DNA from: Hydrolagus colliei
Taxonomy: Eukaryota
Direction: 5' to 3'
Length of the DNA: 64,000 nucleotides
Assembly (NCBI GenBank): GCA_035084275.1
Contig: CM068752.1
Coordinates: forward strand, 8,184,001 to 8,248,000
The translations under genes were made by a program, and so were the position numbers. Under the pieces are notes generated by a model. The model was not told the DNA's origin, made no database searches, and was given only the letters and a program-made list of their open reading frames with translations. Shown one piece after another: positions 151-39,906 of the stretch (its first letter is position 1; each line of letters starts with the position of its first letter).

Positions 151-2625
151 ATGGCGGAGCCCAGCAGCACCGGGATGTTAAACCGCTTGGCGATGTATTT
201 TATCGTCCTACTGTATGTCTGGGACATGGTTTCTGGACAGATTCGGTACACGATCCCCGAGGAACTGGAGCACGGCGCCTTTGTGGGGAATATCGCGGAA
301 GATCTGGGATTAAACCTTCGACAATTATCGGCTCGGGAATTCAGGCTGGTCTCCGAAGATGGGAAACGATACCTAGAGGTAAATCCTGAGAATGGAATTA
401 TTTTCGTCAGTGAAAGAATCGACAGGGAGCGGCTTTGTGAACAGAGCTCTACTTGTTCCCTTTCTTTCGAAGTAATAATCACAAATCCTTTGGAAGTGCA
501 CCGTGTCGCTGTCGAGATACTAGACATTAATGATAATTCACCTAGTTTTCCGAAAAGTGAATTTTTCCTGGAACTCGGTGAATTAATCTCGCCAGGAGCT
601 CGATTCCCTCTTGAGAGCGCGTACGACCCTGACGCAGGCAAAAACGGTATCAGAACGTATCAAATCAGTTCAAATGAATATTTCAATCTGAACTTGCAGG
701 TCACAAGTGATGGTAATAAAATATCCGAGTTGTTGTTAGAAAAAGCATTGGATCGCGAACGGCAGTCAGAATATCATCTAACCCTGACAGCAATTGACGG
801 TGGGGTACCAGAGAGATCTGGCACAGCTAAAATTATTATTAAGGTGGTGGACGCCAATGATAACGCACCTCTATTTGATCATGAACTGTACAAAACGAGT
901 TTACCAGAAAATGCACCTAAAGGTACATTAGTCATCAAAATCAACGCTGCTGATGCAGACGAAGGTACAAATGGCGCAGTTAAATATTTTTTCAGTAATC
1001 ATGCTTCTCAAAGAGTGCGCGAGTTGTTTAGCCTGGAGCCAGAAACAGGCGAGATTAAAGTGAAAGGAGTCCTGGATTTTGAAGAATCAAACGGTTATGA
1101 ACTTGCTGTACAAGCTATGGACAGTGGCGTGCCCGCCATGACCGGACATGCCAAGGTGATTGTGGGAATAGTGGATGTGAATGATAATGCCCCTGAGATA
1201 AAAGTCACCTTATTGTCTAACACGATTCCTGAAAATTCTGAAACCGGAACGCTGATAGCTTTGATCAGTGTCACAGACCGGGATTCGGGTAAAAACGGAG
1301 AGGTTCACTGTCAGATTCCCACCAGCATACCTTTTAAATTACACTCGACTTCCAAGAACCACTACACGTTGGTGAGCAGCGGCATACTGGACCGTGAGGC
1401 TATTTCCATGTACAATATATTAGTATCAGCTTGGGACGGTGGATCGCCGCCTCTTTTGACAAACAAAACAATAATGGTGTCACTTTCTGATGTAAACGAC
1501 AACGCCCCCCGATTTACACAAACCGCATATACTGTTTACGTGACAGAAAACAATGCTCCGGGGGCTGCTATTTTCACAGTTACAGCACTGGATCCTGACT
1601 TGGACCAGAATGGATATGTATCATATTCTGTATTACCAACGCGGGTCAAGGAGATCCCTGTGTCTACTTACATCAGCATCAACTCAAACAAGGGGAATAT
1701 CCACGCGCTACAGTCGTTCGATTACGAGCAGCAAAAGACATTGCAGTTCCAGGTTCAAGCTAAGGATTCTGGAGTTCCTCCTCTTTGGAGCAAATGCACA
1801 GTGAAAGTGATTGTCTTGGATCAAAATGATAATGCCCCAGTGATTGTCTCCCCATTAGCGTGGAATCAGTCAATATCGATTGGGATAAAGTCTCAATCTC
1901 TGTATCCAGGCTACATGGTGACCAAGATAATTGCAACAGATGCCGATTCGGGGCAGAACGCACGGCTTTCTTATCGTCTGGTCAAATCCACCGACTCCAG
2001 TTTATTCATCGTTGGACTCTTTTCCGGAGAAGTCAAAACAATCCGCAGATATTTGGATAAAGATGCGGCAACACAGGTTCTGTCCATTCTGGTGAGCGAC
2101 AATGGACAACCTTCCTTCTCGGCCTCAGTAACTGTTTCTTTCTCAGTAGCCACCAATGCGACTGAAAAACATTTGGAACGTGTTGACTTGGTTCACAGTC
2201 CAGCTACGACTTTTTCCGATCTAAACCTTTATTTGATAATTACTTTCGGCTCAACCACATTGATATTTCTGCTCACCATAATTATGCTGGTCGCTATCAA
2301 ATGTCATCAAGATAGAAATGGTATTCACGAATACAACTCCATACATTGTTGTTGGACTCACAGGAATTTGAGAAGTTCCAGGGATGTATCAATTCGGAAT
2401 CGAGCACCGGCAGAATCTCTAAATTACACTGGAGCCCGGGAAAGAGTTTCCATGCCTGGGGCTTACAATTATAACGTCTGTCTGTCTCCGGAATCAGCAA
2501 AAAGCGACTTTCTCTTTTTAAGTACTTGCAATTCAAACGCTCTGGCGAGTACTATCAAAGTCACTGATAACAACGTGACCAAAGAATTTGGGCAGGAAAG
2601 AGATTTCGGGAACAACAGATATTGA
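151..2625 (+). CDS. Clustered protocadherin variable exon V1 (group A; complete one-exon ORF, stop precedes donor)
   Basis: 824 aa ORF: signal peptide then QIRYTIPEE, EC1 C-x5-C, repeated DRE/DxNDN/AxDxG cadherin motifs, EC6 [10 protein letters not shown], tail YNYNVCLSPESAKSDFLFL. TGA at 2623-2625; donor-like AG|GTGAGA at 2635. Confidence 0.95.
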   Translation: MAEPSSTGMLNRLAMYFIVLLYVWDMVSGQIRYTIPEELEHGAFVGNIAEDLGLNLRQLSAREFRLVSEDGKRYLEVNPENGIIFVSERIDRERLCEQSSTCSLSFEVIITNPLEVHRVAVEILDINDNSPSFPKSEFFLELGELISPGARFPLESAYDPDAGKNGIRTYQISSNEYFNLNLQVTSDGNKISELLLEKALDRERQSEYHLTLTAIDGGVPERSGTAKIIIKVVDANDNAPLFDHELYKTSLPENAPKGTLVIKINAADADEGTNGAVKYFFSNHASQRVRELFSLEPETGEIKVKGVLDFEESNGYELAVQAMDSGVPAMTGHAKVIVGIVDVNDNAPEIKVTLLSNTIPENSETGTLIALISVTDRDSGKNGEVHCQIPTSIPFKLHSTSKNHYTLVSSGILDREAISMYNILVSAWDGGSPPLLTNKTIMVSLSDVNDNAPRFTQTAYTVYVTENNAPGAAIFTVTALDPDLDQNGYVSYSVLPTRVKEIPVSTYISINSNKGNIHALQSFDYEQQKTLQFQVQAKDSGVPPLWSKCTVKVIVLDQNDNAPVIVSPLAWNQSISIGIKSQSLYPGYMVTKIIATDADSGQNARLSYRLVKSTDSSLFIVGLFSGEVKTIRRYLDKDAATQVLSILVSDNGQPSFSASVTVSFSVATNATEKHLERVDLVHSPATTFSDLNLYLIITFGSTTLIFLLTIIMLVAIKCHQDRNGIHEYNSIHCCWTHRNLRSSRDVSIRNRAPAESLNYTGARERVSMPGAYNYNVCLSPESAKSDFLFLSTCNSNALASTIKVTDNNVTKEFGQERDFGNNRY

Positions 2626-3692
2626 TTGGCATAGGTGAGACATTCATTATTAGCCCGTGACAACCTGATTATGGTCATTTCAATTGATATTATAAATTTG
2701 CATTCAACCCCTCGCAGACATACACTTAATGAAGGGTACCAGGTAACCAATTTTGTAATGTAACAAATACTTTAAAAAACAGAGCTTACATTTGACAGTA
2801 CTGTAATGGAAAAAGTGTTAGTCATACCACTGGTTAATGTTCGGGGACCACTTATCGCCAACTCACCCTACATTAGCCAAATGGTCTGTCCTATGCCGCA
2901 ACAGTGATTTTGAAACAATTGTATTTTCACAGAACAGATTATATCCGTGTCTTCTACAATCCTTCCATCTAAAGTAAAATGCAACGAACAATTACTATCA
3001 TTGTTTTGTAATCCGAGAAATTCGGCTGGCGTTTTTTGCCACCTAAAAGTGACAACACAGCATTGTAAAGCTGTTTTAGTCCCAGGTATGATTCTCTATG
3101 CCTTTGTGTTCCAAGACACAATGTTTGAGGCGATGTTTGTGGAGAGGCTCCAATGAGATGTCACGAATTCTGCTTTCCAGGGTCATGCTTGCTGTCTGCG
3201 TCATTGTAGTGGAATAAAGCATTGCTGAGTATTAGGTGATTTAGGCGAATTATTTGTTATTATGATCGTATCATACAATCACGTTGATCATTGGGCAACA
3301 ACATGCGAAATATTCTACAGCCAATTGCTGTTGTTATTGAATAAGTATTGAGGATTCCCAATGAATCTTTCAAATGACACCATTCACAATTACAATGGTC
3401 AATTATTTTTATTACATGCACTAGCCAGGACGATATATTATCTTCAAATACAAACGGTTTTCAAATGACTATGTTGAGGAAGCAGGTATTATTATGGGGA
3501 TAGATTCATATCGCATATCAATATATGGAGTACTTTGTAACGTCAATCATATAAGCCAATGCAAGCAACAATAGAGTTGTTAATACATACGAACTTGTAA
3601 AAAACGAAGGAAGGGATTTTGGTTGCAGGGCAGAAATATACATTTTTCATTAGTATTAACCTTAAAGCAGTTCGCCTTTAAGGGGCGCTCAC

Positions 3693-3734
3693 TGCAATTA
3701 TTGGCCAGGACTCTTTGTGTCGCTGTCTACCAAT
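3693..3734 (+). promoter_or_regulatory. Pcdh promoter conserved sequence element (CSE, CTCF-type) of V2
   Basis: TGCAATTATTGG...CTTTGTGTCGCTGTCTACCAAT; CGCT at 3721, 291 nt upstream of ATG; same motif before every complete variable exon. Confidence 0.9.
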
Positions 3735-4011
3735 GAGGAGAGAAAACGTTCCTGGAGATCTATCGCCCCTCCCACATAGAGGGAGCAGATCAGACAATCG
3801 CCGAGGAAGCTGGCGTTCACTTCAGGCAAAGCAGACAAGCTCCGAGAGTGACCAAAGTCCCCCTTTATTTTGACCATTTCCCACATTTCAATTCAGCATT
3901 GTTGGCACACTCGCGGATGTATTGTAACCCGGACCTTCTGTTGGACACACACACAGCAATTGGTGAGCGATTTGTTGCCTTTGTTCATATCGAAAACTGG
4001 CTGCAGCAAAA

Positions 4012-6444
4012 ATGGCGAATTCGTGCGGCAGAAGTCTAACACCCACCGTGCTTTCACTTGGTTTCCTGCTTTGTGCCTGGGAAGTGTGTGTTGGAGAAAT
4101 TCGCTACTCGATTCCCGAGGAACGGGAACGCGGTACGTTTGTTGGCAACATCGTCCTTGATATTGGACTGAATGTTCGCAGGTTAGCAGCTCGCGAATTC
4201 CGGCTGGTTTCTGATGAGCCAAAGCAATATTTCAAAGTGAATTTAGAAAGCGGCGTTTTGTTTGTGAATGAAAGGATCGACAGGGAAGAGCTGTGCGGGC
4301 AAAGCGATGCCTGCTCCCTGTCTTTTAAGGTAATCGTCAAAAACCCGTTGGAAATATTTCGCGTGGAAGTGGAGATAAATGATATAAACGACAATTCGCC
4401 CGGTTTTCCGAAGAGTGAATTCTCCTTGCGGATCGGGGAATCGATTGCTCCCGGAGCTCGCTTCCCTCTTGAAAGCGCACACGATCCAGATGTGGGGGCA
4501 AACGGCATCAAGTCGTATCGGATCAGTTCGAATCAATACTTTGGCCTAAAAATGCAGGAGGGAAGCGATGGCAGCAAAAGTGCGGATTTGTTGCTGGAGA
4601 GGGCTTTGGATCGCGAACTGGAATCAACCTTTAAGCTGGTTCTGACAGCCATGGACGGTGGAGTTCCAGAACGTTCGGGGACAGCTCACATTACAATTAA
4701 TATCGTGGACGCCAATGATAACGCGCCTTTATTTGACATGCAAGTTTACAGGGCAAGTTTGATTGAAAACTCACCCAAGCGAGCTTTTGTGACCAGAATC
4801 CACGCTACCGATTTGGACCAAGGTGCCAATGCTGAGATACGATATTCCTTCAGCAACCGCGCTTCCAAGAGAGTCCGTGACTTGTTCAGTGTGGACTCGG
4901 AAACTGGAGACATTAACGTTAAAGGTTCACTGGATTTCGAAGAATCAAATGCTTATGAACTTAATGTGGAAGCTACCGACAGTGGCCTCCCAGCTATGAC
5001 AGGATACTCCAGGGTCCTGGTGGAGTTGATTGATGTGAACGATAACGCTCCCGAAGTGAAGCCCACCTTAGTCTCCGGCATGCTCTCAGAGAACACTCCA
5101 GTTGGGACCGTTGTAGCTCTGGTTAGTATAACCGACTCGGATTCTGGAAAAAACGGTAACGTGCGATGTCAAATTCCCACTGACATCCCTTTTAAACTTC
5201 AGTCAGTGGTGAAGCACCACTACGAGTTAATTACAACCGGTGGATTGGACCGTGAAACGAAATCAACGTACAACATCTCTATCATAGCCAGGGATGAAGG
5301 ATCACCGCCACTAACAACAAACAAAACAATATTAGTCACCGTTTCAGATATAAACGATAACTCACCGCGCTTTACGCAATCCCTATACACTGTTTATGTG
5401 ACCGAAAATAACACCCCCGGTACTTCTATATTTCACGTCACGGCTGTAGATGTTGATGCTGAACAGAATGCACATGTGACATATTCTGTCTGGGAGAATC
5501 CGATAGAGGATGTGACGGCGTCCGCTTATATCAGTCTCAGCGCCAACAATGGAGACATTTACGCACTGCAGTCGTTTGACTACGAACAGTTGAAGAGTTT
5601 CCAATTCGAAGTTCGAGCTCAGGATTCCGGAGTCCCCCCGCTGAGCAGCAGAGCGCGAGTGAAAGTTATTGTTTTGGATCAAAATGACAATCCCCCGCTC
5701 GTTGTTTCTCCCCCAACGTGGAATGGCTCCGCCTCGGTGGATGTTGTGCCTCAATCAGTGTATCCGGGCTACCTGGTCACCAAAGTGATTGCAACCGACG
5801 CCGATTCGGGGCAGAACGCACGGCTTTCCTATATGACCACAACCGATTCCGGTTTATTCAGTGTGGGACGCCACTCTGGCGAGATAAGAACAACCCGCAG
5901 AATTCTGGATGAAGACTTAACCACTCAACGTTTGAGTATTCTGATAAAGGACAACGGGCAACCCACTCTCTCCACCTTGGTCACTATTTCTTTCTCAATC
6001 GGTGTCAACGTGACTGAAAAGCCTCTGGAGCGCACCGACGTGCATAGAAAGCCAACCCCATTCTCCCAACTAAATTTGTATTTGATAATTACTTTGGGTG
6101 CAACCTCCTTGATATTCCTCGTGACCATAATCATCCTGTTCGTGATAAAATGCCACCAGGATGGGAATGATATTTACGGGTACGGTTCCACAATTTGCTG
6201 TTGGAGGCACAGGAATCTGAGGAGTTCCCGGGACGTGTCCAATAGACATTCTGCGCAGAACGAATTTCACAATTACCCCGGGGAAAGGGTACCCATTCCC
6301 GGGGCTTACAATTATAACGTGTGTTTGTCTCCCGAGTCAGCGAAGTCTGACTTTTTGTTTTTAAGTACCTGCAACCCAACCATGCCAATGAGCAGTGTGA
6401 AGGCCAACCGTAGCAACTTAAGTCAAGAGGTTTCAGGCCAATAG
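4012..6444 (+). CDS. Clustered protocadherin variable exon V2 (group A, one-exon ORF)
   Basis: 810 aa ORF with 6 EC, TM and the SPESAKSDFLFL tail; TAG at 6442-6444; degenerate donor homolog AA|GTTAGA at 6468. Confidence 0.95.
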   Translation: MANSCGRSLTPTVLSLGFLLCAWEVCVGEIRYSIPEERERGTFVGNIVLDIGLNVRRLAAREFRLVSDEPKQYFKVNLESGVLFVNERIDREELCGQSDACSLSFKVIVKNPLEIFRVEVEINDINDNSPGFPKSEFSLRIGESIAPGARFPLESAHDPDVGANGIKSYRISSNQYFGLKMQEGSDGSKSADLLLERALDRELESTFKLVLTAMDGGVPERSGTAHITINIVDANDNAPLFDMQVYRASLIENSPKRAFVTRIHATDLDQGANAEIRYSFSNRASKRVRDLFSVDSETGDINVKGSLDFEESNAYELNVEATDSGLPAMTGYSRVLVELIDVNDNAPEVKPTLVSGMLSENTPVGTVVALVSITDSDSGKNGNVRCQIPTDIPFKLQSVVKHHYELITTGGLDRETKSTYNISIIARDEGSPPLTTNKTILVTVSDINDNSPRFTQSLYTVYVTENNTPGTSIFHVTAVDVDAEQNAHVTYSVWENPIEDVTASAYISLSANNGDIYALQSFDYEQLKSFQFEVRAQDSGVPPLSSRARVKVIVLDQNDNPPLVVSPPTWNGSASVDVVPQSVYPGYLVTKVIATDADSGQNARLSYMTTTDSGLFSVGRHSGEIRTTRRILDEDLTTQRLSILIKDNGQPTLSTLVTISFSIGVNVTEKPLERTDVHRKPTPFSQLNLYLIITLGATSLIFLVTIIILFVIKCHQDGNDIYGYGSTICCWRHRNLRSSRDVSNRHSAQNEFHNYPGERVPIPGAYNYNVCLSPESAKSDFLFLSTCNPTMPMSSVKANRSNLSQEVSGQ

Positions 6445-7308
6445 TGGGAATTGACTCAATTGGTTAAGTTAGACATTAATACATTAGTTATGTTACGTTT
6501 TAGATTAAATATTATTAACATTAAGTGTCTTTCCACTTTTGTAATATACGCATATGTTTGATGGCCAATTTGCAATGAGGAATATTTTGCTGATATTATA
6601 AACCCAAACCCTATTGTTGTTTCAGGTCCAAGCGAAGGATTTAATTCAGAATTTTATTTGATGATTTTCGTTTGATCTTATTTCATTATTGTGTTAAATT
6701 GCTAATTAAAAAAGGGAAATGGACAAGTGCACGATCTAAAATAATTTTCTATTGTTTCTTACCTTCTTAGCTTTCCTTCATTCTGCTTAATTTTGTCACG
6801 TGTACAAGATTCATCTCATTTACTAGAATTATCTTATTTGGCTACTGTGTTGATACATGTGGAACTTTAATAGAAACCCTGACAAATTAGTTTGTTGCAG
6901 GCATGCTATTCATTCTATGCTGAATAACTTTTCAATCACCTTCAATTCAAAGTGCCGTAAACGATGGTTGTGGTGTGGGAACCCTGGTTAGATATTGTAT
7001 AATTACCCCAGCCCTCAAACGAAACTCATTTCATGCCAAATAACTTCCCACTTTCGATCAGCTAAAACACATAGCCTAGAAAGCAACATATGATTCTACT
7101 TGTCTTCATATATTTGGGGTCATCTCTAAGGTCATTAGAGACAATATCTGAATGGATTATGAGTCCTAAATGAGAAAATAAAATAGGACCTCTTACCAAC
7201 TAAATAAGCCATCAGATCTCCACAATTTACCATGCGATATGTTGGCTACACGACAATATATGATGGCTGATTGAGAATATAGACAGTCTAGCTTTAAATA
7301 ACATTGAG

Positions 7309-7350
7309 TGCAGTTTTGGGGCGTAACAGTTTGTGTCGCTGTCTACCAAT
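7309..7350 (+). promoter_or_regulatory. CSE of V3
   Basis: TGCAGTTTTGG...TTTGTGTCGCTGTCTACCAAT; CGCT at 7337. Confidence 0.9.
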
Positions 7351-7586
7351 AAGAAGCAGAAACGTTCTTGGAGATCCATCAGCCCTCCTCCATCGCCATA
7401 ACGCAGAGCAGAATCAAAGAGACAGCCTGCATTTGCGCCTTGGAGTCTTGATCGGACAAACAAAGGCACAGCCTTGGTATTTGACGAGCTGAATTCGGTA
7501 TTTCTGTATGTTAGTAGTCGCAGTTTACGGCAACAAACATCCCATGATGTGATCTGCATCAGTGTTTTAAAATAGAATTGGAAGGA

Positions 7587-10004
7587 ATGGCGAATTCACG
7601 CAGCGGAGAGATGTTAACTGGTATGGCGATTCAGTTCATTTTCCTGCTGTCTACCTCGGATTTAATATCGGGACTAATTCGGTATTCGATTCCGGAGGAG
7701 ATGGAGCACGGGGCTTTAGTGGGAAATGTTGCTGAAGATTTGGGCCTGAAGGTTTGGGAATTGTCTGGTCGGAAATTTGGATTGGTGTCTGATGAGAGGA
7801 AGCAATATTTTCAGGTAAACTCCGCAAATGGGATTTTGTTTGTGAATGAGAGAATCGATAGAGAGCAGTTGTGTGGACAACGCAATGTGTGTACCATTTC
7901 TTGTCAAGCCATGATGGAAAATCCTTTGCAAACATACCGATTTGAAGTGGAGATCTTAGATATAAACGATAATTCGCCCAGTTTCCCGAAGAGCCGATAT
8001 TCCTTGCAAGTGCCTGAATCATTTGCATCAGGGACGCGCTTCCCTCTCGAGAGCGCGCACGATCCCGACGTGGGTACAAATACAATCAGAATTTACGAGA
8101 TCAGTTCAAATGATCATTTCGTTTTGAATGTAGAAACCACAAGGGATGGGAAGAAGGTGGCTGAATTGGTATTAGAAAAGTCTTTGGACCGAGAGCAGCA
8201 ATCTAATCTTCATCTTACTCTGAAAGCTATAGATGGAGGGGTACCGCAGAGGTCTGGTGTAACACAGATTATAATTGATGTGCTGGATGCTAATGATAAC
8301 GCCCCTGTATTTGACAACGATTTATACAAGGTACGTTTGATGGAAAACCAGCCTAGGGGTACATTGGTAATTAGAATTTACGCTGTTGATGTGGACGAAA
8401 GTTCGAATGGCGAAGTGCGATATTTTTTCAGCAAACACGCTTCGGAAAAAGTGCGTGAAATGTTTAATATAGATCAGGAATCTGGTGAGATTAGAGTTCA
8501 AGGAACAATCGACTTTGAGGAATCGGATGGATATGAATTTTCTGTGGAAGCTACGGATAATGTTCCATTGGCTATGGTAGGCCATTCCAAGGTTATGGTG
8601 GAAATAATTGACGTGAACGACAACGCTCCTGAGATACAGGTTACCGTCCTCTCCAGCACGGTTCCCGAGGACACCGCTCCCGAGACACTGGTAGCTTTAA
8701 TTAGCGTCACAGACCGAGATTCTGGGCGAAACGGAGATGTTCAATGCCAGATTTCAACTAAGGTTCCTTTCAAACTTCAAAAGAATTCCGAGAATCACTA
8801 TAAATTGGTTTCGAGTAATACATTGGATCGTGAAACCAACTCTTTGTACATTATATCAATATCGGCTTGGGACAACGGGTCTCCCCCTCTCTCTGCAAAC
8901 AAATCCATAATGATATTAGTTTCTGATGTAAATGATAACGCACCACAGTTTGAGAAACCTTCATACAATATATATGTGGCAGAAAACAATTTATCCGGCG
9001 CCTCTATTTATGCCATTACCGCCACAGACCCTGATCTGAATCAAAACTCCGACCTCTCATATTCTATCCTGCTCCAGGATTCCGCTGTGTCGTCTTATAT
9101 TAGCATCAACCCAAACAATGGGAATATCCATGCTTTGCGCTCGTTTGACTATGAAGAGCAAAAGAAATTTGAGTTTCAAGTTGAAGCCCGTGATGCTGGG
9201 ATGCCCTCGCTGAGTGGCACCACCAAAGTTCATGTCATTATTCTGGATCAAAACGACAACGCCCCAGTCATTGTGTCGCCTTTAGCGTGGAACGGATCGG
9301 CTGTTGTGGGAGACGTGCATCCCTCAGCCTATCCAGGACACTTGGTCACGAAGGTGGTGGCAACGGATGCCGATTCCGGTCAAAACGCACGACTCTCATA
9401 CCAGGTGATCAAAGCTACAGTTCCCGGTTTGTTCAGTGTGGGGCAGTACTCTGGAGAAATTAGAAACGCCCGCAGTTTTTCAGACCACACTCCAATCACA
9501 CAAAGTCTAGTCATCGTGGTGAAGGACAACGGGCAACCAACCCTCTCGGCCTCTGTGACCATTTTATTTTCAATGGCTGTCAACGTGACAGAAAGACTCT
9601 CTGAGCGTGCTAATTCATACCACGAAAATCCCACCTCCTTCTCCGATCTGAATATTTATTTGATTATTACTTTGGCTTCCACTTCGTTTGTATTTCTGAT
9701 CACCATCGTTATCCTCGTCGTCATCAAATGCCATCAGTCGAGAAATACGACTTATGGCTACAAATCGACTATTTGCTGTTGGAGATTTGGGAATTCACAG
9801 GACAGGTATAATCGTCGACCGATTCGAAGCGATTGCCTGAATTACACAGGAGTTGGAGGACCTGTCGCCATTCCCGGGCCTTATAATTACAGGGTTTCAT
9901 TGTCTCCAGAATCAGCAAAAAGTGATTTTCTGTTTCTGGACACCTGCAATTCAACCATACCCATGAGTACCATTAAAGCCACTGACACGAATGTGACAAA
10001 ATAA
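7587..10004 (+). CDS. Clustered protocadherin variable exon V3 (group A, one-exon ORF)
   Basis: ATG GCG AAT at 7587 (ORF track starts at TTG 7578); 6 EC, TM, SPESAKSDFLFL; TAA at 10002-10004; donor homolog TG|GTGAGG at 10052. Confidence 0.95.
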   Translation: MANSRSGEMLTGMAIQFIFLLSTSDLISGLIRYSIPEEMEHGALVGNVAEDLGLKVWELSGRKFGLVSDERKQYFQVNSANGILFVNERIDREQLCGQRNVCTISCQAMMENPLQTYRFEVEILDINDNSPSFPKSRYSLQVPESFASGTRFPLESAHDPDVGTNTIRIYEISSNDHFVLNVETTRDGKKVAELVLEKSLDREQQSNLHLTLKAIDGGVPQRSGVTQIIIDVLDANDNAPVFDNDLYKVRLMENQPRGTLVIRIYAVDVDESSNGEVRYFFSKHASEKVREMFNIDQESGEIRVQGTIDFEESDGYEFSVEATDNVPLAMVGHSKVMVEIIDVNDNAPEIQVTVLSSTVPEDTAPETLVALISVTDRDSGRNGDVQCQISTKVPFKLQKNSENHYKLVSSNTLDRETNSLYIISISAWDNGSPPLSANKSIMILVSDVNDNAPQFEKPSYNIYVAENNLSGASIYAITATDPDLNQNSDLSYSILLQDSAVSSYISINPNNGNIHALRSFDYEEQKKFEFQVEARDAGMPSLSGTTKVHVIILDQNDNAPVIVSPLAWNGSAVVGDVHPSAYPGHLVTKVVATDADSGQNARLSYQVIKATVPGLFSVGQYSGEIRNARSFSDHTPITQSLVIVVKDNGQPTLSASVTILFSMAVNVTERLSERANSYHENPTSFSDLNIYLIITLASTSFVFLITIVILVVIKCHQSRNTTYGYKSTICCWRFGNSQDRYNRRPIRSDCLNYTGVGGPVAIPGPYNYRVSLSPESAKSDFLFLDTCNSTIPMSTIKATDTNVTK

Positions 10005-12647
10005 TTTTAACAGGAAACGAGGACATGAACAGCAGACACGGGTTAACAATGGTGAGGCATTGATTTCAGAAATGGAATGTAATTGTTGCATACGGTAATT
10101 GCTTTTGTCCCAGGATCTATTTTTAATTAATTTTCTCTCTTTCTAAACTAACATGCATATTTGAGGGTACGTAAAAGACCAGATTATGATTTGACAGGCA
10201 TCTTCCTAAGCTAGGCTAATAGAGTGACATTATAATCAAAAGCTCTCATAATTACAAGTGACATGAAGGAATTGCTTGATTATTTTTACAGGTGCCTTAA
10301 TTATGGATTCCATACTTGTGCTCTAGAGCTTATATCCAGAGCTCAACAAGCTTAACTCCATTCAAACTACTGCTGTTTATGTTTACCACTTTTTATCATT
10401 TTAATGTTTCTATCTTTTTAACTAATAATACCGTAGTTGTCCAATATATGTGCTGTAATAAATTGTACGCAACATATTAACCCTGCAATATTTTTTTCTC
10501 TATATATACTTAAAGCAATCAGGCTCTCCAACGCAAAGAGATGAGAACTATTAATGGACAATTGTGGGAAAATAAGATCCGGTCAAGAAGAAATACATAG
10601 TGGTTTTCCAAGAATACAAAAAGGTTTGAACCAACGACTTGCTGAATATTTTATTGTTTAAATGCTGTAACGTAAATGCTGTAATGCTGTAACTGACTAT
10701 TTTCTCAAAACCTTTCAAGATCCTAAAAATATCTAAAAAGTCGAACACCACTGGAGTATTTTGAAGGATTTGTATTCTCTCGAAGAAAGGGGGATCACTG
10801 ATCACATTGTAAAAACAACATTGTTTGAATATTAGTTATTTTTGTTCACTGTAACATTTGTTTGAAGAACTGAAATACTTTAAAATAGTGAATAATAATT
10901 AATTACTTCATTGTTCAGTTTATATCCAAATGAAAAATCTGCTCAATTAAATCGTGGACTATTTATCCTGCAAAACCAAAAATAGCAAGCATCAGAAATT
11001 TTGAAAATATGCTTATGGAATCACTTGTATATTATATTTAGTTTTAAAATGTTGTAAGCTATTTAGTTGCATTAAGATGACATGATATGGTAACACACAT
11101 TTACTAGAATGATGTACTGTTTGTCTACTAACAATAAGTTTACAGTAACAAATTTCATTCTTGTTCAAGACAAACCATTGGACCCAGAATAATGTTTTGC
11201 TATAATGATATGAACAAGTTTGAAGGTGTAGTTGCTTTGTACAATATCTGTGTTCAACTAACCATATATCATTGCATGAAGTACAACCCAATACATATAA
11301 TGTGGACAAAATCATTATTTTAAATTATATTGTTACGTAATGTTTCTGATAGCAAGAATTACCAAACTGGAAGAAATTGTTGAACAAAAACGTAAGGATG
11401 ACAATGTCATTTGCAACATAATCTCCCATCTTGTCTGTAAAAAATATGAAGTTGTGACAATTCTATTTGTATGCGTAAACATCGTTTTAAATAGGATGTT
11501 GATCGAAAAGCAAATTGAACACGTTGCTGTATTTCCACAATAGTATATTGAAAACACATCTTATTTGTGTCTAGTTCTGTGGCGAGCAATGTCAAAATTC
11601 ATTGGATAATGCATCTTAACTGTAGTAACATTTTGGCAAAGCAGCATTATATTATCTTAGAGCATGTAGATGTTAACCCACAAGAGTTAAACATGTTTAT
11701 ATCTTGTTGTTCAATTATTAACACTTCATCATATTAGTTCCAAATAAATATTTGAAAGTAATCAGATGCAATAGTCACTGGTATTCTCAAGCTAGTTTAA
11801 ATATAAATAATGTAGTAAACACCCTCAGTTATGTCTGACTAGCATTTTTATATGTTTTCTTTGTGTAAATATGTTTTAGGATATTAAACAACATTTTACT
11901 GATACCTTTACGTTGCCTCTCATTTGCATTTAATTTAGACAACTCGTATCTTGACAATTGTTCATCACCCGGCTGATTAAAATATTTATGAACTGAATGT
12001 ATTATACATGATCACTTGAAGGACTCTCCCATTCTCTGTAAGGATATTTGCAGAAGGGCAATTTTGTGGTTAATGTGGTTAATTTTGATAAATCAGTGAC
12101 ACATTAATTGGTACAACAATTACATAAAAGTACAAGAAATGTAAACATGCCACTTCTGGAATAGTAAACGTCATACAGATTCAAAATGTCGGAAATAGAT
12201 GTACACATTTTATCATATTATTAGGAAGCAATGTGTTCGAAAAGTTGCATCCATTTTTTTTTCATTGCAGTGTAATTTGATTTTTTTTAACTATGTGAAT
12301 TTTATTTCCTAGGGTCTCGAGCTGACCTTTTACTTTTTAAAAAAAATTACAAATATAAGTAATGGTTGTTCTGTTACTGAAGTCGTCCATCAAAATTACT
12401 TTGAAACCCAGATAGCAATTCCATTATAGTATATCAATTGCTACATTTTCTATGTAAACTATACCTGATTAATAAAAAGATCTTCTGTTTCAATTTGATG
12501 ATGGAGTTTAAATAGTGAATATAGAAGGGTTTGGGGTTTCAATGTTAGACAGGAACTATTACAATTCATTTCACATATTTTGTTTAGAATGACTGTGGTC
12601 ACTATGAATAATACTGTGACTACAGCCTACCTTTAAGAAATGCTTAT

Positions 12648-12689
12648 TGTAGTTATTGGCCAGTACTCTTTGTGTCGCTGTCTTCCAAT
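12648..12689 (+). promoter_or_regulatory. CSE of V4
   Basis: TGTAGTTATTGG...CTTTGTGTCGCTGTCTTCCAAT; CGCT at 12676. Confidence 0.9.
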
Positions 12690-12960
12690 CAGAAGATAAA
12701 ACGTCATTGGGGATCCATCAGCCCTCCCCCACCGCCATACGCAGAACAGAGTCAAAGAGAAAGGCGAATCATTCCTGCTTTTAAACGGTGGTGCAATGGT
12801 CGGAGAGAGATGTCTTTCCTTTTTGTTTCTTAGTTGATAGAGGGGGCTCATTTCATACAGTCCCCTTCCCTTATAATTGCATTTAGCGTTAGAATCGACC
12901 AGCGATTGCAAATAACCAGCGATGTTTTACACGTTTGCACCGGGGCCGAATACGGGAACA

Positions 12961-15363
12961 ATGGCGAAACCAGGCAGCCAGGCTGGGCTTTATGTTTTCC
13001 TGCTGTGTGTGTTGCACCTCGTCACTGGTCAAACCAGCTACACCATTCCCGAGGAAGCGGAGCAGGGTAGCTATGTGGGGAATATCGCTGAGGATCTGCG
13101 ACTGAACGTCCGGGCTCTGCCAGCTCGCGAGTTGCGGCTGGTCTCTTACGACAGCGAAGAGTACCTGGAGGTAAATTTGGACACTGGAATTTTATTTGTT
13201 CGCCAAAGAATTGACAGGGAGCAAATCTGTGGCCAAAGCCTTTCCTGCTCCCTTTCATTTGAAGTGATGGTTGAAAGCCCTTTGGAAATACATCGCGTTG
13301 AGGTCGAGATACTTGATATAAATGACAATTCTCCCAGTTTTCCTAAGAATGAATTGACCTTGCAGATCGGTGAATCCACTGCTCCCGGGGCTCGGTTTCC
13401 TTTGGAGAGCGCACACGACCCTGATGTGGGCACTAATGCAATCAAAACATATCAGATTAGTTCAAATGATTATTTCGGCATCAATGTTCAGAGCAGAAGC
13501 GACGGGAGTAAACGTGCTGAATTGTTACTGGAGAAGCCGCTAGATAGGGAACAAGAGTCAAAGCTCAAGCTGGTTCTTACAGCTATTGATGGAGGTGTCC
13601 CACCCAGATCTGGAACATCTCATGTTATCATTACTGTACTGGATGCTAACGACAACGCGCCTGTGTTTGATCATGAAATATACAGGGTGAGTTTGGCAGA
13701 AAACGCTTCGAAGAATGCATTTGTTGTCCGCGTCAAAGCTGCCGATTCAGATTCCGGTTTAAATGCTGAGGTAAAATATTATTTCATTAACCACCTACCC
13801 CACGGTGTGAATGACCTGTTTAGTTTGGACCCGAAAACGGGAGAGATTCGTGTTCAAGGAATACTGGATTTTGAGCAGTCGCACGTTTATGAACTTGAGG
13901 TACAAGCTGTTGACAGTGGTAGTTCTGCCCTGGCAGGGCATTGCAAAGTTTTGGTCTCAATAGTGGACGTAAACGATAATGCCCCCGAGGTTAAACTGAC
14001 CTCAGTGTCCAGTACTGTCCGTGAAAATGCATCGCCTGGGACTGTTATATGCCTAATCAGTGTGACAGACAGAGATTCTGGGAAAAACGGTCAAGTACAT
14101 TGTCAGATCCCCAATAACATCCCATTTGAACTACAAAAATCTCTGGCTAATCAATATAAATTGATTACCAGCGATAAGCTGGACCGTGAGACGAACCCTA
14201 CCTACAATATATCCCTATCTGCCTGGGATGCAGGGACTCCTCAGCTTTCTGCACACAGAACCATTTGGGTGTCGGTTTCTGATGTCAATGACAACGCGCC
14301 TCAGTTTGCTCAGTCGGTGTATACCGTGTATCTGAAGGAAAACAACACTCCCGGCGCCTCCATCTTTGCGGTGACCGCCGTGGACCCTGATCAGGATCAG
14401 AACTCTTACGTAACCTACTCCATGCTGGAGAACCAAATCCAGGGTACGTTTGCGTCCTTTCACGTCAGTGTGAACTCCAACAGTGGGAATATTTACGCAC
14501 TGCATTCCTTTGATTATGAAGAACTCAAACGCTTTCAGATTCAGATTCAGGCCCGGGATTCCGGAGTGCCTCCGCTCAGCAGCAGCGTCGCAATCAATGT
14601 GATCATACTGGATCAAAATGATAACAGACCCGTCATTATTGCACCTCTAACGTGGAATGGGTCAGCGGCTGTGGAGGTGCTACCTGGCGCTCCATCGCCA
14701 GACTACCTGGTGACCAAGATAATCGCCACTGATGCGGATTCTGGTCAAAACGCCCGGCTATCCTACCATATACTCCAAGCGACTGACGCCAGTTTGTTCA
14801 CAGTGGGGCTGCATTCCGGGGAAATAAAAACAACCCGCAGTTTTCTAGGCCAAGATTCCAGCACACAGAGTTTGGTGATTGAAGTCACCGACAATGGACA
14901 ACCATCCCTCTCCGCAAGCGTCACGGTGCTTGTTTCTACGGCTGCTAATGTGACTGAAAAATACTCTGACCAGCGTCCAGTGATAGACCCAAAGCCTGCT
15001 GCCACTTTCCATCTAAATCTATATTTAATTGTCATATTGGGTTCTACATCATTGATATTTCTTATCATCATTGTTTTGCTGATTGTCATCAAATGCCACC
15101 AAGACAGGCACACTGGCTACGATTGCTGCTGTTGGGAAACGAGGAATTTGAGGAATGTTTCTCACGGAAGAGCTACACCAAAAGAATCGTTACATTATAC
15201 CGAGGTTGGTGAAAGGATTCCCATTCCTGCAACGTATAATTATAGGGTTTCCCTTTCTCCAGAATCGGCGAAGAGTGACTTTCTGTTTCTAAAAACATAC
15301 AATCAGGACATCCACAGTAACAGCGTCACTGACACCAACGTTACCAAACAATATTGTCAATAA
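12961..15363 (+). CDS. Clustered protocadherin variable exon V4 (group A, one-exon ORF)
   Basis: Strong-context acaATGG at 12961 (in-frame upstream ATG at 12922); 6 EC, TM, SPESAKSDFLFL; TAA at 15361-15363; donor homolog TT|GTGAGG at 15398. Confidence 0.95.
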   Translation: MAKPGSQAGLYVFLLCVLHLVTGQTSYTIPEEAEQGSYVGNIAEDLRLNVRALPARELRLVSYDSEEYLEVNLDTGILFVRQRIDREQICGQSLSCSLSFEVMVESPLEIHRVEVEILDINDNSPSFPKNELTLQIGESTAPGARFPLESAHDPDVGTNAIKTYQISSNDYFGINVQSRSDGSKRAELLLEKPLDREQESKLKLVLTAIDGGVPPRSGTSHVIITVLDANDNAPVFDHEIYRVSLAENASKNAFVVRVKAADSDSGLNAEVKYYFINHLPHGVNDLFSLDPKTGEIRVQGILDFEQSHVYELEVQAVDSGSSALAGHCKVLVSIVDVNDNAPEVKLTSVSSTVRENASPGTVICLISVTDRDSGKNGQVHCQIPNNIPFELQKSLANQYKLITSDKLDRETNPTYNISLSAWDAGTPQLSAHRTIWVSVSDVNDNAPQFAQSVYTVYLKENNTPGASIFAVTAVDPDQDQNSYVTYSMLENQIQGTFASFHVSVNSNSGNIYALHSFDYEELKRFQIQIQARDSGVPPLSSSVAINVIILDQNDNRPVIIAPLTWNGSAAVEVLPGAPSPDYLVTKIIATDADSGQNARLSYHILQATDASLFTVGLHSGEIKTTRSFLGQDSSTQSLVIEVTDNGQPSLSASVTVLVSTAANVTEKYSDQRPVIDPKPAATFHLNLYLIVILGSTSLIFLIIIVLLIVIKCHQDRHTGYDCCCWETRNLRNVSHGRATPKESLHYTEVGERIPIPATYNYRVSLSPESAKSDFLFLKTYNQDIHSNSVTDTNVTKQYCQ

Positions 15364-16424
15364 ACCTGCAATATGAACAATTCACAGTGATAAGCTTGTG
15401 AGGTTTTGGGTCCCACAGTATTGTAGTGTCACGTGTATTCAAATAGCAGATCGCTCATTATCTTCTACAATACATACACTCGTGGAGAAATGACCCTGTA
15501 GCAACAAGTACAATTGTATAATCATTCGGCAAGGGGTTATGATGAAGGAAGTGAATTAGACGTTCCTAACCAGTTTTCGAATGATACCACTATGATGGAT
15601 TCCTGCGAGTGACTGGGATTACTTTTCACATTACATAAATACGATGAGAAGGGACGAAATACAATTGTTTTGAAAATAACTGATAATGGGAATGAAATGG
15701 TACCTATTTTGTGTTTTTAGACAAACAGTTGACATTTGCCACTGTTGATGTTATATTAATGAATATCCTATAATTTTCTGCATTATTTCTCCAGGCAGGC
15801 ATAGTTCATTTAAATGTTTGGTAAAATATCAACATGGCAAAGTCATGGTTTCCATCCATTAAACCATAAAAACGCTTGAAACATGATAAATCCACAGATG
15901 CATTCTTTCTGATACTCCATCATCGGCACTGAACTCAATTACACTCATGAACATTATGCTTCCATTTACTGTTGAAATTCTCAAATTGCATGTATTTAAA
16001 CAATATACAGTACAGGCACGACAAGATAAAGCATGCACAATTATGAAATAACTTTTGCGTATTTATATCGTTTAACAATCTCTTTTTAAGATGCACCCGG
16101 AACCATTTACCCTTTGGTTTGTCATTTGGGGGAGCAGTTCTGCAGAAATAAATAAAGGATTAAATGGTAGTCCATTCAAGTGGTAGTGAAAAACTTCTAT
16201 AATTGAAGCATATTCCTGCGATCATAACTACATTTCTTTTGTAAATAGTTTGAAAAGGCCTAAATTATGTGCTCATCTTCAATAAAATTCAATTATGATG
16301 ACCCTCTTTGTATATTTATTTTACTTCTCTCTAGCACGCAACTGATGGCAACAAATGGGTTGGAACAGTCCAGACTTTCCAAAACTACTTTACACAATTT
16401 CACACAGACAAAACAAGTCAATTC

Positions 16425-19492: not shown

Positions 19493-21925
19493 ATGAACCC
19501 TTTGTCTTATGTTGCTGTCTTTTATATCTTGGGTCTGGCGTTTGGAAAAATTCGTTATTCTATTCCCGAAGAATTGGACAACGGTGCTTTTGTTGGAAAT
19601 ATAGCTAAGGACCTGGGTTTGAATGTTGAATCTCTATCGAAAAGAAGGTTTAGGATAGTCTCTGTCGCCAGGAAGCGTTTTCTGGAGGTGGATATACAAA
19701 ATGGAGTTTTGTTTGTGAATACGAGGATAGACAGAGAACAGCTGTGTGGAGCAAATGCTGCTTGTTTTCTGCGTTTAGAAGCCGTGATCGAAAACCCGTT
19801 GGAATCTTTCCAAATAGAAGTGCAAATTCTTGACGTAAATGATAATGCTCCCAGATTCGAAAGGAGCGAACAACACATAGAAATCCCCGAGACAGCAGCA
19901 CCGGGGACTCGCTTTCTGCTGGACAGCGCACAGGACACAGACGTCGGTACAAATTCTCTTGATACTTACCTGCTTAGTCAGAATGATTATTTCTCGCTGG
20001 ATGTACAGACTGGGAGTGATGAGGGTAGATTAGCCGAATTGATACTCCAGAAAAATCTGGACAGGGAAAAACAAGCCGCCTACAACCTGGTCCTGACAGC
20101 GCTAGATGGTGGCTCCCCGGCTTTATCAGGAACCACATTGATCAAAATTACTGTGTTGGATATTAACGACAATATGCCTGTTTTTGATCACACTATCTAC
20201 AGGGTTAATGTACTGGAAAATGTTCCTAAAGGAACATTGATCATCAAACTGAACGCTACAGATGCAGATGAAGGTGCAAATGGCGAGGTCATGTACAACT
20301 TCCGCAGGCGCACTCCAAAGAAAATCCTTGATATCTTTAAGTTAGAGCCCAACACGGGAGAGATTCGAGTTCAAGGAGTGATTGATTTTGAAGAAAATAA
20401 TTCTTATGAGATGATCGTAGAAGCTAAAGACCAAGGTGCGTCTGCAGCTCCTGCACATTGCAAAGTTGTGGTCACAGTCTTAGATATGAATGATAATCCA
20501 CCCCAGGTCATCCTTACTTCACTGTCCAGTCCAGTCCCTGAAGATGCCCCACCGGGAACAGTGGTGGCTCTGATCAGTGTAACAGACCAAGAATCAGGAG
20601 GAAACGGCGAAATACGCTGTCAGATTCAACACGATGTCCCCTTCCAATTGAATTCGTCCTCAAAGAATTCCTACATGTTAGTCACCCGATACTTCCTGGA
20701 CAGGGAAACGTTTTCTCAATACAGCGTTACAATCTCATGTAGGGATTTGGGTCTGCCTCCTCTGGTTGCCAATAAAACCATCCAGGTGGAGATATCAGAT
20801 ATCAATGACAACGCACCAGATTTTGACCAACCTTCGTTCACAGCCTATGTAACAGAGAACAACTCACCTGGTTCATCTATATTCTCAGTGACCGCTTTTG
20901 ACCCCGACGAACAGCAGAACACGCACCTGTCGTACTCTATTCTTCACACTCAGGTGAAGGGTGCTCCTGTTTACGATTACGTATCCATCAATTCAGAAAG
21001 CGGAATTATCTTTTCACAGAATTCGTTTGACTATGAACAACTCAAGAATTTTCAGATTGGTGTTCAAGTGCAGGATGGAGGCTCCCCACCACACGCAGCC
21101 AACGTTACAGTAAACGTAGTTATCTTGGATCAGAATGATAACGCGCCAATCATTGTATCGCCCATACCAGCGGATGGCTTTGACGCAATCATTTCTGCAT
21201 CTGTGGATCCGGGTTATCAGGTGACAAGAATCATCGCCACAGATGCTGATTCGGGACAAAACGCGCGCCTTTCCTACCAATTGCTAGACGCCACACAGCC
21301 AGGTTTGTTCACCGTGATACCGAGCTCTGGGGTAATCAGGACGACTCGGCGTTTGGAAGACATGAAAGGCACTGTCCACCGACTTTTTATTATGGTGAAA
21401 GACAGTGGCCATCCTCCGCTCTCAGCCACAGGTACTGTTAGCCTGTCCATTATTGATGGTGGTGCAGAAATGTTATCTGACTTCAGTGGGAACCTCCCCA
21501 AGTCGACGGATTCGTCGGATTTGGCCTTTTATATCATTATATCGTTAGGATCAATTTCATTTGTTCTTCTGTTGACTATAATTTCCCTTGTTGCCACCAT
21601 ATGTCACAACGACAGTGGTTCCTACAGTACCCGCTGTTGCTTCAGGCAGAGGAATCTGAATGACATGTTCCAGAATTCCCATGTCAATTTGCAGAGAGAG
21701 CACAATGCCGAATTGGTTTCAAACTACATGGAAGTTCGAGGAACCGGTTCGCTCTCCCGCACCTATTGTTATAAAGTTCATTCGGCTTCTGAATCCGGCA
21801 AAGGCGATCTGGTATTCCAGGAATCGGCTCCAGCGACTCTGGCAACCCGTGAGAAACCGGTGGCAATTGCAAAAGCAGAATGGAATGGAAGCGCCGCAGG
21901 CAATTGGGTCAAGATACCTATCAAG
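19493..21925 (+). CDS. Clustered protocadherin variable exon V5 (group B)
   Basis: 6 EC, TM, tail EVRGTGSLSRTYCYKV; phase-0 donor AAG|GTGAGT after 21925 (unspliced ORF ends 21934). Confidence 0.95.
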
Positions 21926-25412: not shown

Positions 25413-25473
25413 GTGAGTTTTTTTTCTTCTAGATTTAAGGATCTAGAAAATATTATGGTCATAATATTATGGT

Positions 25474-39875: not shown

Positions 39876-39906
39876 GTGGGTAGCAGATACAATACCAAAG
39901 CAAATA

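What the first reader, a model, noticed from the sequence alone, without database searches (positions are those of the whole stretch)
151..15403. Four-gene Pcdh subgroup cut off from its constant region by stop codons placed just before fossil splice donors
Seen: V1-V4 stop at 2625, 6444, 10004 and 15363, and the DNA after each stop aligns between paralogs up to a donor-like site (AG|GTGAGA 2635, AA|GTTAGA 6468, TG|GTGAGG 10052, TT|GTGAGG 15398). V1's donor is still phase 0, like all eight group B donors, but has TGA and TAG upstream. The first stops fall at different homologous codons (V3 TAA aligns with V1 GAA). Known: mammalian Pcdh-beta genes are one-exon genes with no constant region. Inference: this is a beta-like state reached by truncating formerly spliced variable exons. 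A published elephant shark cluster has delta/epsilon/mu/nu subclusters, so novelty needs checking against it.
Basis: partly seen in the sequence, partly recalled or inferred. Interest (0 to 1): 0.8.

Follow-up and report, generated by a model that had tools for sequence, protein, structure and literature searches.

The report
Constant-less protocadherin-epsilon genes with relic donors
These four genes are the last members of the already described protocadherin-epsilon group of cartilaginous fishes, which make a protein from one exon, and they still carry worn remains of the splice site that their ancestors probably used.

Summary
All four stops and all four donor-like sites are at the stated coordinates. 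A contig from one public run confirms the V1 and V2 stops.

The four genes are not a separate subgroup.
- V1 is the ortholog of elephant-shark 'Protocadherin epsilon18': 87% identity, same stop codon.
- V9 is the ortholog of 'mu5'.
- So V1-V4 are the 3' end of the Pcdh-epsilon subcluster, probably eps18-21, and V5-V12 are mu1-8.
- The mu constant exons 1 and 2 lie inside the window at 56402-56458 and 56909-56995.

The named epsilon proteins, and dozens of shark and ray relatives, are about 800 aa long and have no constant region. The beta-like state is therefore old, shared by the whole subcluster, and already in public records.

The relic-donor reading is partly supported.
- Similarity among V1, V3 and V4 runs through the stops to the GTGAG and then ends.
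- The site lies where spliced relatives have their real donor.
- V2's copy has decayed to GTTAGA and V4's is weak.

No RNA data were available, so whether the sites are still used is untested. Interest is modest.

The parts
151..2625 (+). V1: Pcdh-epsilon variable exon and complete coding sequence; ortholog of C. milii epsilon18
   Evidence: 824-aa ORF. Pfam Cadherin x5, Cadherin_2, Cadherin_C_2. 87% identity and 100% coverage to 'Protocadherin epsilon18', with the same C-terminal ...NNRY stop. Sister to it at 100* in the tree.
2635..2640 (+). V1 donor-like site TAG|GTGAGA, phase 0, 9 nt after the TGA and directly after a TAG
   Evidence: PWM score 5.27; only 19 of 3629 GT sites in the window reach 5. 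It lies 38 codons after the DFLFL motif.
4012..6444 (+). V2: Pcdh-epsilon variable exon and coding sequence (probably eps19)
   Evidence: 810-aa ORF. A 14-nt gap relative to its paralogs just before the stop. The C. milii counterpart is seen inside the fused model P0004, where the tail reads on.
6468..6473 (+). V2 decayed copy of the donor-like site, TAA|GTTAGA
   Evidence: PWM score -1.98. 11 of 13 bases identical to V1's GTGAGACATTCAT.
7578..10004 (+). V3: Pcdh-epsilon variable exon and coding sequence (probably eps20); first ATG at 7587
   Evidence: 808-aa ORF. 86% identity to the epsilon part of the C. milii fused model P0005. The 21-aa tail after DFLFL equals the modal elasmobranch tail length.
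10052..10057 (+). V3 donor-like site ATG|GTGAGG, 48 nt after the TAA
   Evidence: PWM score 5.28. The 50 nt from the stop codon up to it align with the corresponding V1 stretch (z 4.6).
12922..15363 (+). V4: Pcdh-epsilon variable exon and coding sequence (probably eps21), the last epsilon gene before mu1
   Evidence: 813-aa ORF. Falls in the holocephalan epsilon group in the tree.
15398..15403 (+). V4 weakened donor-like site CTT|GTGAGG
   Evidence: PWM score 1.91.
3716..3734 (+). Conserved CGCT-box promoter element of V2; the same element lies at 7332 (V3), 12671 (V4) and before each of V5-V12
   Evidence: 11 hits with at most 1 mismatch, all on the + strand, 175-297 nt before the ORF starts; none on the - strand.
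19493..55992 (+). V5-V12: eight Pcdh-mu variable exons (mu1-mu8) with phase-0 donors at 21926, 25413, 30036, 35231, 39876, 45389, 49224 and 55993
   Evidence: V9 is 87% identical to 'Protocadherin mu5', V7 pairs with mu3. Donors.
56402..56458 (+). Pcdh-mu constant exon 1 (VGQLNTDWRSSEPYIASKI)
   Evidence: tblastn with the constant part of C. milii mu5: 19 of 19 aa identical.
56909..56995 (+). Pcdh-mu constant exon 2
   Evidence: tblastn: 29 of 29 aa identical. Constant exon 3 is not in the window.

Best explanation
V1-V4 are the last four genes of the protocadherin-epsilon subcluster of a chimaera-type fish. They are orthologs of elephant-shark eps18 and, by inference, eps19-21. They sit directly upstream of the mu subcluster (V5-V12 plus mu constant exons 1 and 2).

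Each epsilon gene has its own CGCT-box promoter. Each encodes a complete signal peptide, six cadherin repeats, a membrane span and a short cytoplasmic tail, and each ends at a stop codon inside the variable exon. The protein therefore lacks the shared constant cytoplasmic domain, as mammalian Pcdh-beta proteins do.

This state is ancestral to the whole epsilon clade, at least to crown cartilaginous fishes. The GTGAG-type site 9-50 nt after the stops is the remnant of the 5' splice site of a formerly spliced variable exon. It lies where mu and bony-fish relatives have their working donor, and it marks the end of paralog homology. It is in different stages of decay: core intact in V1 and V3, weakened in V4, lost in V2. 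Once the tail was cut off from the constant region, stop positions drifted by stop gain and stop loss, and frame-breaking indels accumulated after the stops.

Shown: identity, stops, donor-like sites, homology boundary, positions. Inferred: that the sites are relics, that they are no longer needed, and that the transcripts end near each exon.
For: Identity:
- V1 is 87% identical over 100% of its length to 'Protocadherin epsilon18', with an identical stop position.
- V9 is 87% identical to 'mu5'.
- The epsilon and mu clades separate at 100*, and V1 pairs with eps18 at 100*.
- The mu constant exons are in the window.

Constant-less state:
- The named epsilon proteins are 801-827 aa and carry no PF15974 domain. 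mu3 and mu5 are 951 and 966 aa, carry it, and share an identical 140-aa constant part.
- 60 motif-bearing epsilon-like proteins (7 from C. milii, 53 from sharks and rays) end 12-34 aa after the DFLFL motif.

The genes look functional:
- Intact ORFs and Pfam domains.
- Intact promoter element before V2-V4, identical to that of the mu exons.

Relic donor:
- Homology among V1, V3 and V4 continues past the stops to the GTGAG (z 2.9-4.6).
- It is gone in the next 60 nt (z at most 1.2) and in the next 800 nt (6 of 6 pairs, z -0.8 to 1.3).
- This is the same pattern as at the real mu donors (pre-donor median z 3.0; after the donor 0 of 28 pairs above 3).
- The site lies 38 codons after DFLFL in V1. 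The real donor lies 35-36 codons after the corresponding motif in mu and 39-40 in bony-fish relatives whose variable-exon tail is significantly similar to epsilon tails (z up to 6.7).

Decay:
- PWM scores are 7.5-8.5 for seven of the eight mu donors (V9 4.9), 5.3 for V1 and V3, 1.9 for V4 and -2.0 for V2.
- The stretch from the stop-equivalent codon to the site is 51, 41, 50 and 49 nt long in V1-V4, so the frame is broken in V2-V4.
Against: - No RNA data: the only run holding the stretch is not on record as RNA. Neither disuse of the sites nor the 3' ends of the transcripts are shown.
- There is no sequence similarity between epsilon and mu tails, so homology with the mu donors is positional only.
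- The paralogs are old: about 60% aa identity, as far from each other as from shark epsilon genes. Retention of an alignable 50-nt post-stop stretch and of an intact GTGAG core in V1 and V3 could instead mean that the stretch is still constrained.
- The PWM frequencies were recalled, not taken from a tool.
- DNA of other species could not be fetched, so conservation of the site across species is untested.
- The names eps19-21 rest on UniProt accession arithmetic, not on named hits.
- The text of Yu et al. 2008 was not available.
Confidence: 0.7

Rival explanations
1. The donor-like sites of at least V1 and V3 are still used. Epsilon transcripts run on and are spliced from the post-stop site to the mu constant exons, or to another downstream exon. 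The constant exons then serve as untranslated 3' sequence, and the transcripts may be subject to nonsense-mediated decay.
For: V1 and V3 keep G|GTGAG, with scores in the top 19 of 3629 GT sites. The post-stop stretch is more conserved among old paralogs than the DNA beyond it. The epsilon genes share the promoter element and the orientation of the mu exons, and they lie upstream of the mu constant exons.
Against: V2's site is GTTAGA and V4's has T at -1 and -2, so selection for a donor is not general. A stop far upstream of two further exon junctions would normally destabilise the mRNA (established knowledge of nonsense-mediated decay, not tested here). Deposited epsilon proteins carry no constant part. 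No RNA evidence either way.
Confidence: 0.17
2. The real donors lie upstream of the stops, as in ordinary variable exons, and the stops are intronic. The candidates are the in-frame AAC|GTGACC in V1, AAT|GTGACA in V3, AAC|GTTACC in V4 and GAG|GTTTCA in V2. The proteins would then carry the mu constant region.
For: All four candidate GTs are in phase 0, which is the phase of the mu constant exon 1 acceptor.
Against: Their PWM scores are -0.9 to -5.5. V2 has no GT at the position homologous to the other three; its own candidate lies elsewhere. C. milii eps18 has Phe where V1 has the Val codon, so the GT is not conserved in the ortholog. The tail downstream of it is conserved as protein between V1 and eps18 (12 of 15 residues). 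The deposited epsilon proteins end at the stops.
Confidence: 0.03
3. The GTGAG motifs are a chance feature of a conserved 3' untranslated element and never were splice sites.
For: There are 67 GTGAG on the + strand of the window. There is no sequence similarity to mu exon ends. V1-V3 also share CATTNAT just after the hexamer, so the conserved block is not cut exactly at the GT.
Against: The motif is at the aligned position in three paralogs, with a one-base variant in the fourth. It lies within 2-3 codons of where the real donors of two kinds of spliced relatives lie. Homology ends there as it does at real donors.
Confidence: 0.08
4. The stops are assembly errors, or the four genes are pseudogenes.
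For: None found. The V3 and V4 stops were not checked against reads.
Against: The V1 and V2 stops stand in a contig of run X1. V1's stop is shared with the C. milii ortholog. The ORFs of 808-824 aa are otherwise uninterrupted, with full domain sets and promoter elements.
Confidence: 0.02

Closest known systems
Protocadherin-epsilon subcluster of the elephant shark, Callorhinchus milii (Yu et al. 2008, PNAS 105:3819; UniProt B0YN57-B0YN73 seen here)
   Same: V1 is the ortholog of eps18 (87% identity, same stop). The position directly upstream of the mu subcluster is the same. Proteins of about 800-827 aa end in the variable exon without a constant region.
   Different: The species is different: about 13% protein divergence. 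V2 has a lineage-specific 14-nt deletion and an earlier stop than the C. milii counterpart seen in the fused model P0004. I could not check whether the 2008 paper mentions relic donors, because its text is not held. The statement that the epsilon subcluster has no constant exons is recalled. It is supported indirectly by a later paper that lists constant exons for alpha, gamma, delta, mu and nu only (PMC2764143, passages).
Pcdh-beta one-exon genes of mammals, coelacanth and lizard
   Same: Clustered protocadherins with their own promoter, a full ectodomain, a membrane span and a short tail, and no constant exons (description in PMC2764143, passages).
   Different: They are not orthologous. The literature places beta only in lobe-finned fishes and tetrapods, and epsilon only in cartilaginous fishes (PMC2764143). 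No beta sequence was put in my tree, so the relation was not tested here. Whether beta genes keep relic donors was not examined.
Pcdh-mu variable exons (V5-V12 of this window) and spliced bony-fish relatives (Amia, Anguilla, Acipenser, Aldrovandia proteins with a Cadherin_tail domain)
   Same: Same exon architecture and promoter element. The bony-fish proteins share the SPESAKSDFxFLKPC tail motif with epsilon. Their real donor lies 35-40 codons after the motif, where epsilon has its donor-like site.
   Different: They read through to a consensus phase-0 donor and continue into constant exons. The epsilon genes stop 3 to 17 codons earlier.

Membership tests
Clustered protocadherin variable exon | One large exon encoding a signal peptide, six cadherin repeats, a membrane span and a short cytoplasmic segment | tested here: met
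   ORFs of 808-824 aa. Pfam Cadherin (5 stretches), Cadherin_2 and Cadherin_C_2 for V1. V2-V4 are about 60% identical to V1 over their full length.
Clustered protocadherin variable exon | Own promoter with the conserved CGCT-box element upstream of each exon | tested here: met
   The 19-nt element lies 246-296 nt before V2, V3 and V4 and before all eight mu exons. For V1 the expected place is beyond the window's start. That this element is the known CGCT box is recalled; PMC2926608 mentions a CGCT element in the elephant-shark cluster (passages).
Pcdh-epsilon subcluster (cartilaginous fishes) | Orthology or clade membership with the named epsilon proteins | tested here: met
   Best named hit is eps18 at 87%. 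The epsilon clade has 100* support, and V1-V4 group with eps17 and eps18 (92).
Pcdh-epsilon subcluster (cartilaginous fishes) | Position between the delta and mu subclusters, directly upstream of mu1 | tested here: met
   V5-V12 are mu exons followed by mu constant exons. The upstream side (delta) is outside the window.
Pcdh-epsilon subcluster (cartilaginous fishes) | Coding sequence ends inside the variable exon; no constant region | tested here: met
   Stops. Same stop as eps18. No similarity to the mu constant region between V4 and V5 at E up to 10. Only the mu constant region was used as the query.
One-exon (beta-like) protocadherin gene | Transcript is unspliced and polyadenylated near its own exon | not testable with these tools
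   No RNA run holds the stretch. AATAAA and ATTAAA hexamers are as frequent after the mu exons as after the epsilon exons.
Pcdh-beta subcluster | Orthology to tetrapod or coelacanth beta genes | not tested
   No beta sequences were included in the tree. The literature says beta is absent from the elephant shark (PMC2764143).

The most novel reading that the evidence does not exclude
Epsilon variable exons are still spliced, from donors that lie after their stop codons, onto the mu constant exons. One constant region would then be coding for mu isoforms and an untranslated, decay-coupled tail for epsilon isoforms. That would be a way of tuning the level of constant-less protocadherins through splicing.
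Probability: 0.15. Interest if true: 0.6.

Novelty: new member of a known kind. Interest (0 to 1): 0.3.

Why it matters
The window shows, in a second chimaera-type species, how a constant-less protocadherin family looks at the DNA level. The exon still ends in recognisable remains of a 5' splice site, at the place where spliced relatives have theirs. This supports the idea that beta-like clustered protocadherins arise from spliced variable exons by a stop codon, not by retroposition or by deletion of the exon end. It also suggests that the same route was taken independently of the tetrapod beta genes.

It further gives a concrete and cheap test: junction reads at three named positions. That test would settle whether any epsilon transcript still reaches the mu constant exons.

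It does not change the known picture of the cluster. The constant-less epsilon group is already deposited and published.

Tried and rejected
RNA evidence. The look-up of sequencing runs (kind rna) listed one run, not on record as RNA. Read laying on it gave only a genomic contig. Expression and splicing therefore stayed untested.

Conservation of the donor-like site in elephant shark and sharks could therefore not be checked, and the stops of the C. milii counterparts of V3 and V4 are unknown. The third protein search found the V3 counterpart only inside a fused model that lacks the tail.

Relic constant region between V4 and V5. tblastn with the mu constant part found nothing there at E up to 10. 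The GC-skewed stretch around 16.6-17.2 kb is a reverse-transcriptase-like repeat fragment on the - strand, like the one at 62.6-63.6 kb.

Poly(A) hexamers do not discriminate between epsilon and mu exons.

Epsilon against mu tails. No DNA similarity and no protein similarity. In one search only 5 of 8 mu exons were compared; V6, V7 and V11 did not match my motif.

Direction of change of the stop position. The tree does not decide it. The tree was a quick search with SH-aLRT support only. It held 55 rows: the 12 window exons, 6 C. milii epsilon proteins, 3 mu-type proteins, and 34 of the 55 elasmobranch proteins I had fetched, picked by hand for spread. It held no alpha, beta, gamma, delta or nu sequences.

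Literature. Yu et al. 2008 is not held. Four full-text searches found no paper that states whether epsilon genes keep donor remains. This is no proof that it is not in print. Supplementary files were not consulted.


Full report
What is in the window. The + strand carries twelve large ORFs of 808-892 aa. V1 and V5 were scanned against Pfam, and both have the domain set of clustered protocadherin variable exons: Cadherin in five stretches, Cadherin_2 and Cadherin_C_2. A 19-nt CGCT-box element occurs exactly eleven times with at most one mismatch. All hits are on the + strand, 175-297 nt before the ORF starts of V2 to V12. For V1 the expected place lies before the window's first base.

The observation.
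- V1: TGA 2623-2625 and TAG 2632-2634, then GTGAGA at 2635.
- V2: TAG 6442-6444, then GTTAGA at 6468.
- V3: TAA 10002-10004, then GTGAGG at 10052.
- V4: TAA 15361-15363, then GTGAGG at 15398.

V1's site is in phase 0; the others are in phases 2, 2 and 1. All eight later exons have a phase-0 donor inside their ORF. Seven of them are consensus (AAG/GAG/CAG|GTGAGT or GTAAGT), and V9 has GAG|GTGGGT. V3's TAA aligns with GAA in V1, CAA in V4 and GAG in V2.

One 17.7-kb contig of the only public run that holds the stretch covers 1501-6700 with 11 differences and no gaps. None of the differences is at the V1 or V2 stops or donor-like sites. That run may be the assembly's own sample. V3 and V4 were not checked in this way.

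Identity. V1's best named hit is Callorhinchus milii 'Protocadherin epsilon18' (826 aa, 87% identity, full coverage). It ends ...TKEFEQERGVGNNRY, the same stop position as V1's ...TKEFGQERDFGNNRY. V9's variable exon is 87% identical to 'Protocadherin mu5' (966 aa).

In a quick maximum-likelihood tree of 55 rows:
- the epsilon rows (44) and the mu rows (11) separate with 100* support;
- V1 pairs with eps18, V7 with mu3 and V9 with mu5, each at 100*;
- V1-V4 form a holocephalan-only group with eps17 and eps18 (support 92, unresolved inside).

The UniProt numbers of the named proteins run in order: eps8, 9, 14, 17 and 18 are B0YN63, 64, 69, 72 and 73, and mu3 and mu5 are B0YN79 and 81. This leaves exactly three entries between eps18 and mu1. 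I therefore read V1-V4 as eps18-21 and V5-V12 as mu1-8. That step is an inference; no hit named eps19-21 was returned.

The constant part of mu5 finds constant exon 1 at 56402-56458 and exon 2 at 56909-56995, both 100% identical in protein. It finds nothing between V4 and V5. The genome is thus that of a chimaera-type fish other than C. milii. Earlier notes of this scan say the same.

The beta-like state is old and already on record.
- The named epsilon proteins seen here are 801-827 aa and have no Cadherin_tail domain. mu3 and mu5 have it and share one identical 140-aa constant part.
- Of 69 stored proteins of 780-830 aa, 60 carry the SPESxKSDFLFL-type motif, and all 60 end 12-34 aa after it. 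The counts are 27 at exactly 21 aa, 16 at 12 aa, 4 at 20, 3 at 19, 3 at 25, 2 at 34, and one each at 18, 22, 27, 30 and 33. Of the 9 without a match, 4 are epsilon-like with a variant motif and 5 are mu-like. These proteins come from C. milii and from sharks and rays of several orders.
- In the tree, C. milii B0YN57, eps8 and eps9 are sister to the elasmobranch clade with 18-22-aa tails (99*). At least two epsilon lineages therefore predate the split between chimaeras and elasmobranchs, and both are constant-less.
- A later paper from the same group lists constant exons for the alpha, gamma, delta, mu and nu subclusters but not for epsilon (PMC2764143, passages). That Yu et al. 2008 describe epsilon as lacking constant exons is my recollection; the paper is not held.

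Stop positions. V3's tail after DFLFL has 21 residues (DTCNSTIPMSTIKATDTNVTK), the modal length in elasmobranchs (for example KPCHPTLPFNDLGVRDTNARK). V1 and eps18 have 34, V2 has 26 and V4 has 23. The other C. milii tails have 25, 25, 25, 27, 30 and 33. There are two possible readings. In one, the 21-aa stop is ancestral and was lost by single-base changes in V1 (GAA), V2 (GAG) and V4 (CAA). In the other, a stop close to the donor is ancestral (V1, eps18, eps14 and B0YN57 all end in Y) and earlier stops arose several times. The tree does not decide between them. Either way the scatter does not call for four separate cut-offs from a constant region.

Is the donor-like site a relic? Four points speak for it.
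1. The stretch from the stop-equivalent codon to the site is 51, 41, 50 and 49 nt long in V1-V4. It aligns better than shuffles for V1-V3, V1-V4 and V3-V4 (z 4.6, 2.9 and 3.3; 0, 1 and 0 of 500 shuffles). The 60 nt after the hexamer do not (z at most 1.2). Nor do the next 800 nt in any of six pairs (z -0.8 to 1.3).
2. The real mu donors show the same pattern. The 51 nt before them have a median z of 3.0, with 14 of 28 pairs above 3. After them, 0 of 28 pairs are above 3.
3. The position fits. V1's site lies 38 codons after DFLFL. The real donor lies 35-36 codons after the corresponding motif in the mu exons. In four spliced bony-fish proteins (Amia, Anguilla, Acipenser, Aldrovandia) it lies 39-40 codons after. 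Those proteins share the SPESAKSDFxFLKPC motif, and their tails resemble epsilon tails (z 3.7-6.7 for the first 21 residues, up to 5.4 for the longer C. milii tails).
4. There is a decay series. With a recalled position-weight matrix, seven mu donors score 7.5-8.5 (V9 4.9), V1 and V3 score 5.3, V4 scores 1.9 and V2 scores -2.0. Only 19 of 3629 GT sites in the window reach 5. V2's GTTAGACATTAAT is a one-step variant of V1's GTGAGACATTCAT.

Three points speak against it or leave it open.
- Epsilon and mu exon ends share no DNA or protein similarity.
- V2's post-stop stretch does not align significantly.
- The paralogs are old, so an alignable post-stop stretch and two intact GTGAG cores might reflect present use rather than slow decay.

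Rivals.
- An upstream in-frame donor is unlikely. The candidate GTs score -0.9 to -5.5. V2 has no GT at the position where the other three have theirs. In C. milii eps18 the Val codon is a Phe codon, and the tail beyond it is conserved as protein.
- Live post-stop donors cannot be excluded without RNA.
- Chance is unlikely, given the aligned position in four paralogs and the match with the donor positions of relatives.
- Assembly error is excluded for V1 and V2 and made unlikely by the shared stop in eps18.

Verdict. But the object is the known Pcdh-epsilon subcluster in another chimaera-type species, not a new four-gene subgroup. The added value is the anatomical evidence that these constant-less genes descend from spliced variable exons, together with a clear RNA test of whether any of the old donors still works.

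Noticed in passing
window 56402-56458 and 56909-56995: Constant exons 1 and 2 of the mu subcluster lie only about 400 and 900 nt after the last mu variable exon. They are 100% identical in protein to C. milii, against about 87% for the variable exons. Exon 3 is beyond the window.
   Followed up: yes
window 16550-17500 and 62600-63650, - strand: Two fragments of the same retroelement family with reverse-transcriptase-like ORFs (YADDTQLY..., ...LHWLPI...). The first lies inside the stretch that another note of this scan (s1-902000) proposed as a 'ghost constant region'. The mu constant region finds nothing there.
   Followed up: partly
window 39876: The mu5 ortholog (V9) has a weak donor, GAG|GTGGGT (score 4.9 against 7.5-8.5 for the other seven), although C. 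milii mu5 is deposited as a spliced protein.
   Followed up: no
window 3716, 7332, 12671, 19208, 22686, 27374, 32506, 37153, 42666, 46478, 53251: A 19-nt promoter element (TGTGTCGCTGTCTACCAAT, at most 1 mismatch) occurs once before each variable exon and nowhere else on either strand. It is identical between epsilon and mu genes.
   Followed up: yes
proteins P0176, P0178, P0190, P0199 (Amia, Anguilla, Acipenser, Aldrovandia): These spliced bony-fish clustered protocadherins are 57-58% identical to the mu5 ortholog. Their variable-exon tail carries the epsilon-type SPESAKSDFxFLKPC motif, and their constant region is different (..KQPNTDWPLSK..). They may be the delta type. Their relation to epsilon could show which spliced group epsilon came from.
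   Followed up: partly
proteins P0002, P0004, P0005, P0006, P0007, P0008, P0022 (C. milii database models): Several automatic gene models of the elephant shark fuse neighbouring epsilon exons, or epsilon and mu exons, into proteins of 880-1338 aa. This hides the true gene ends in sequence searches.
   Followed up: no
window 31759-31910: A run of 152 N between V7 and V8. It was left untouched.
   Followed up: no
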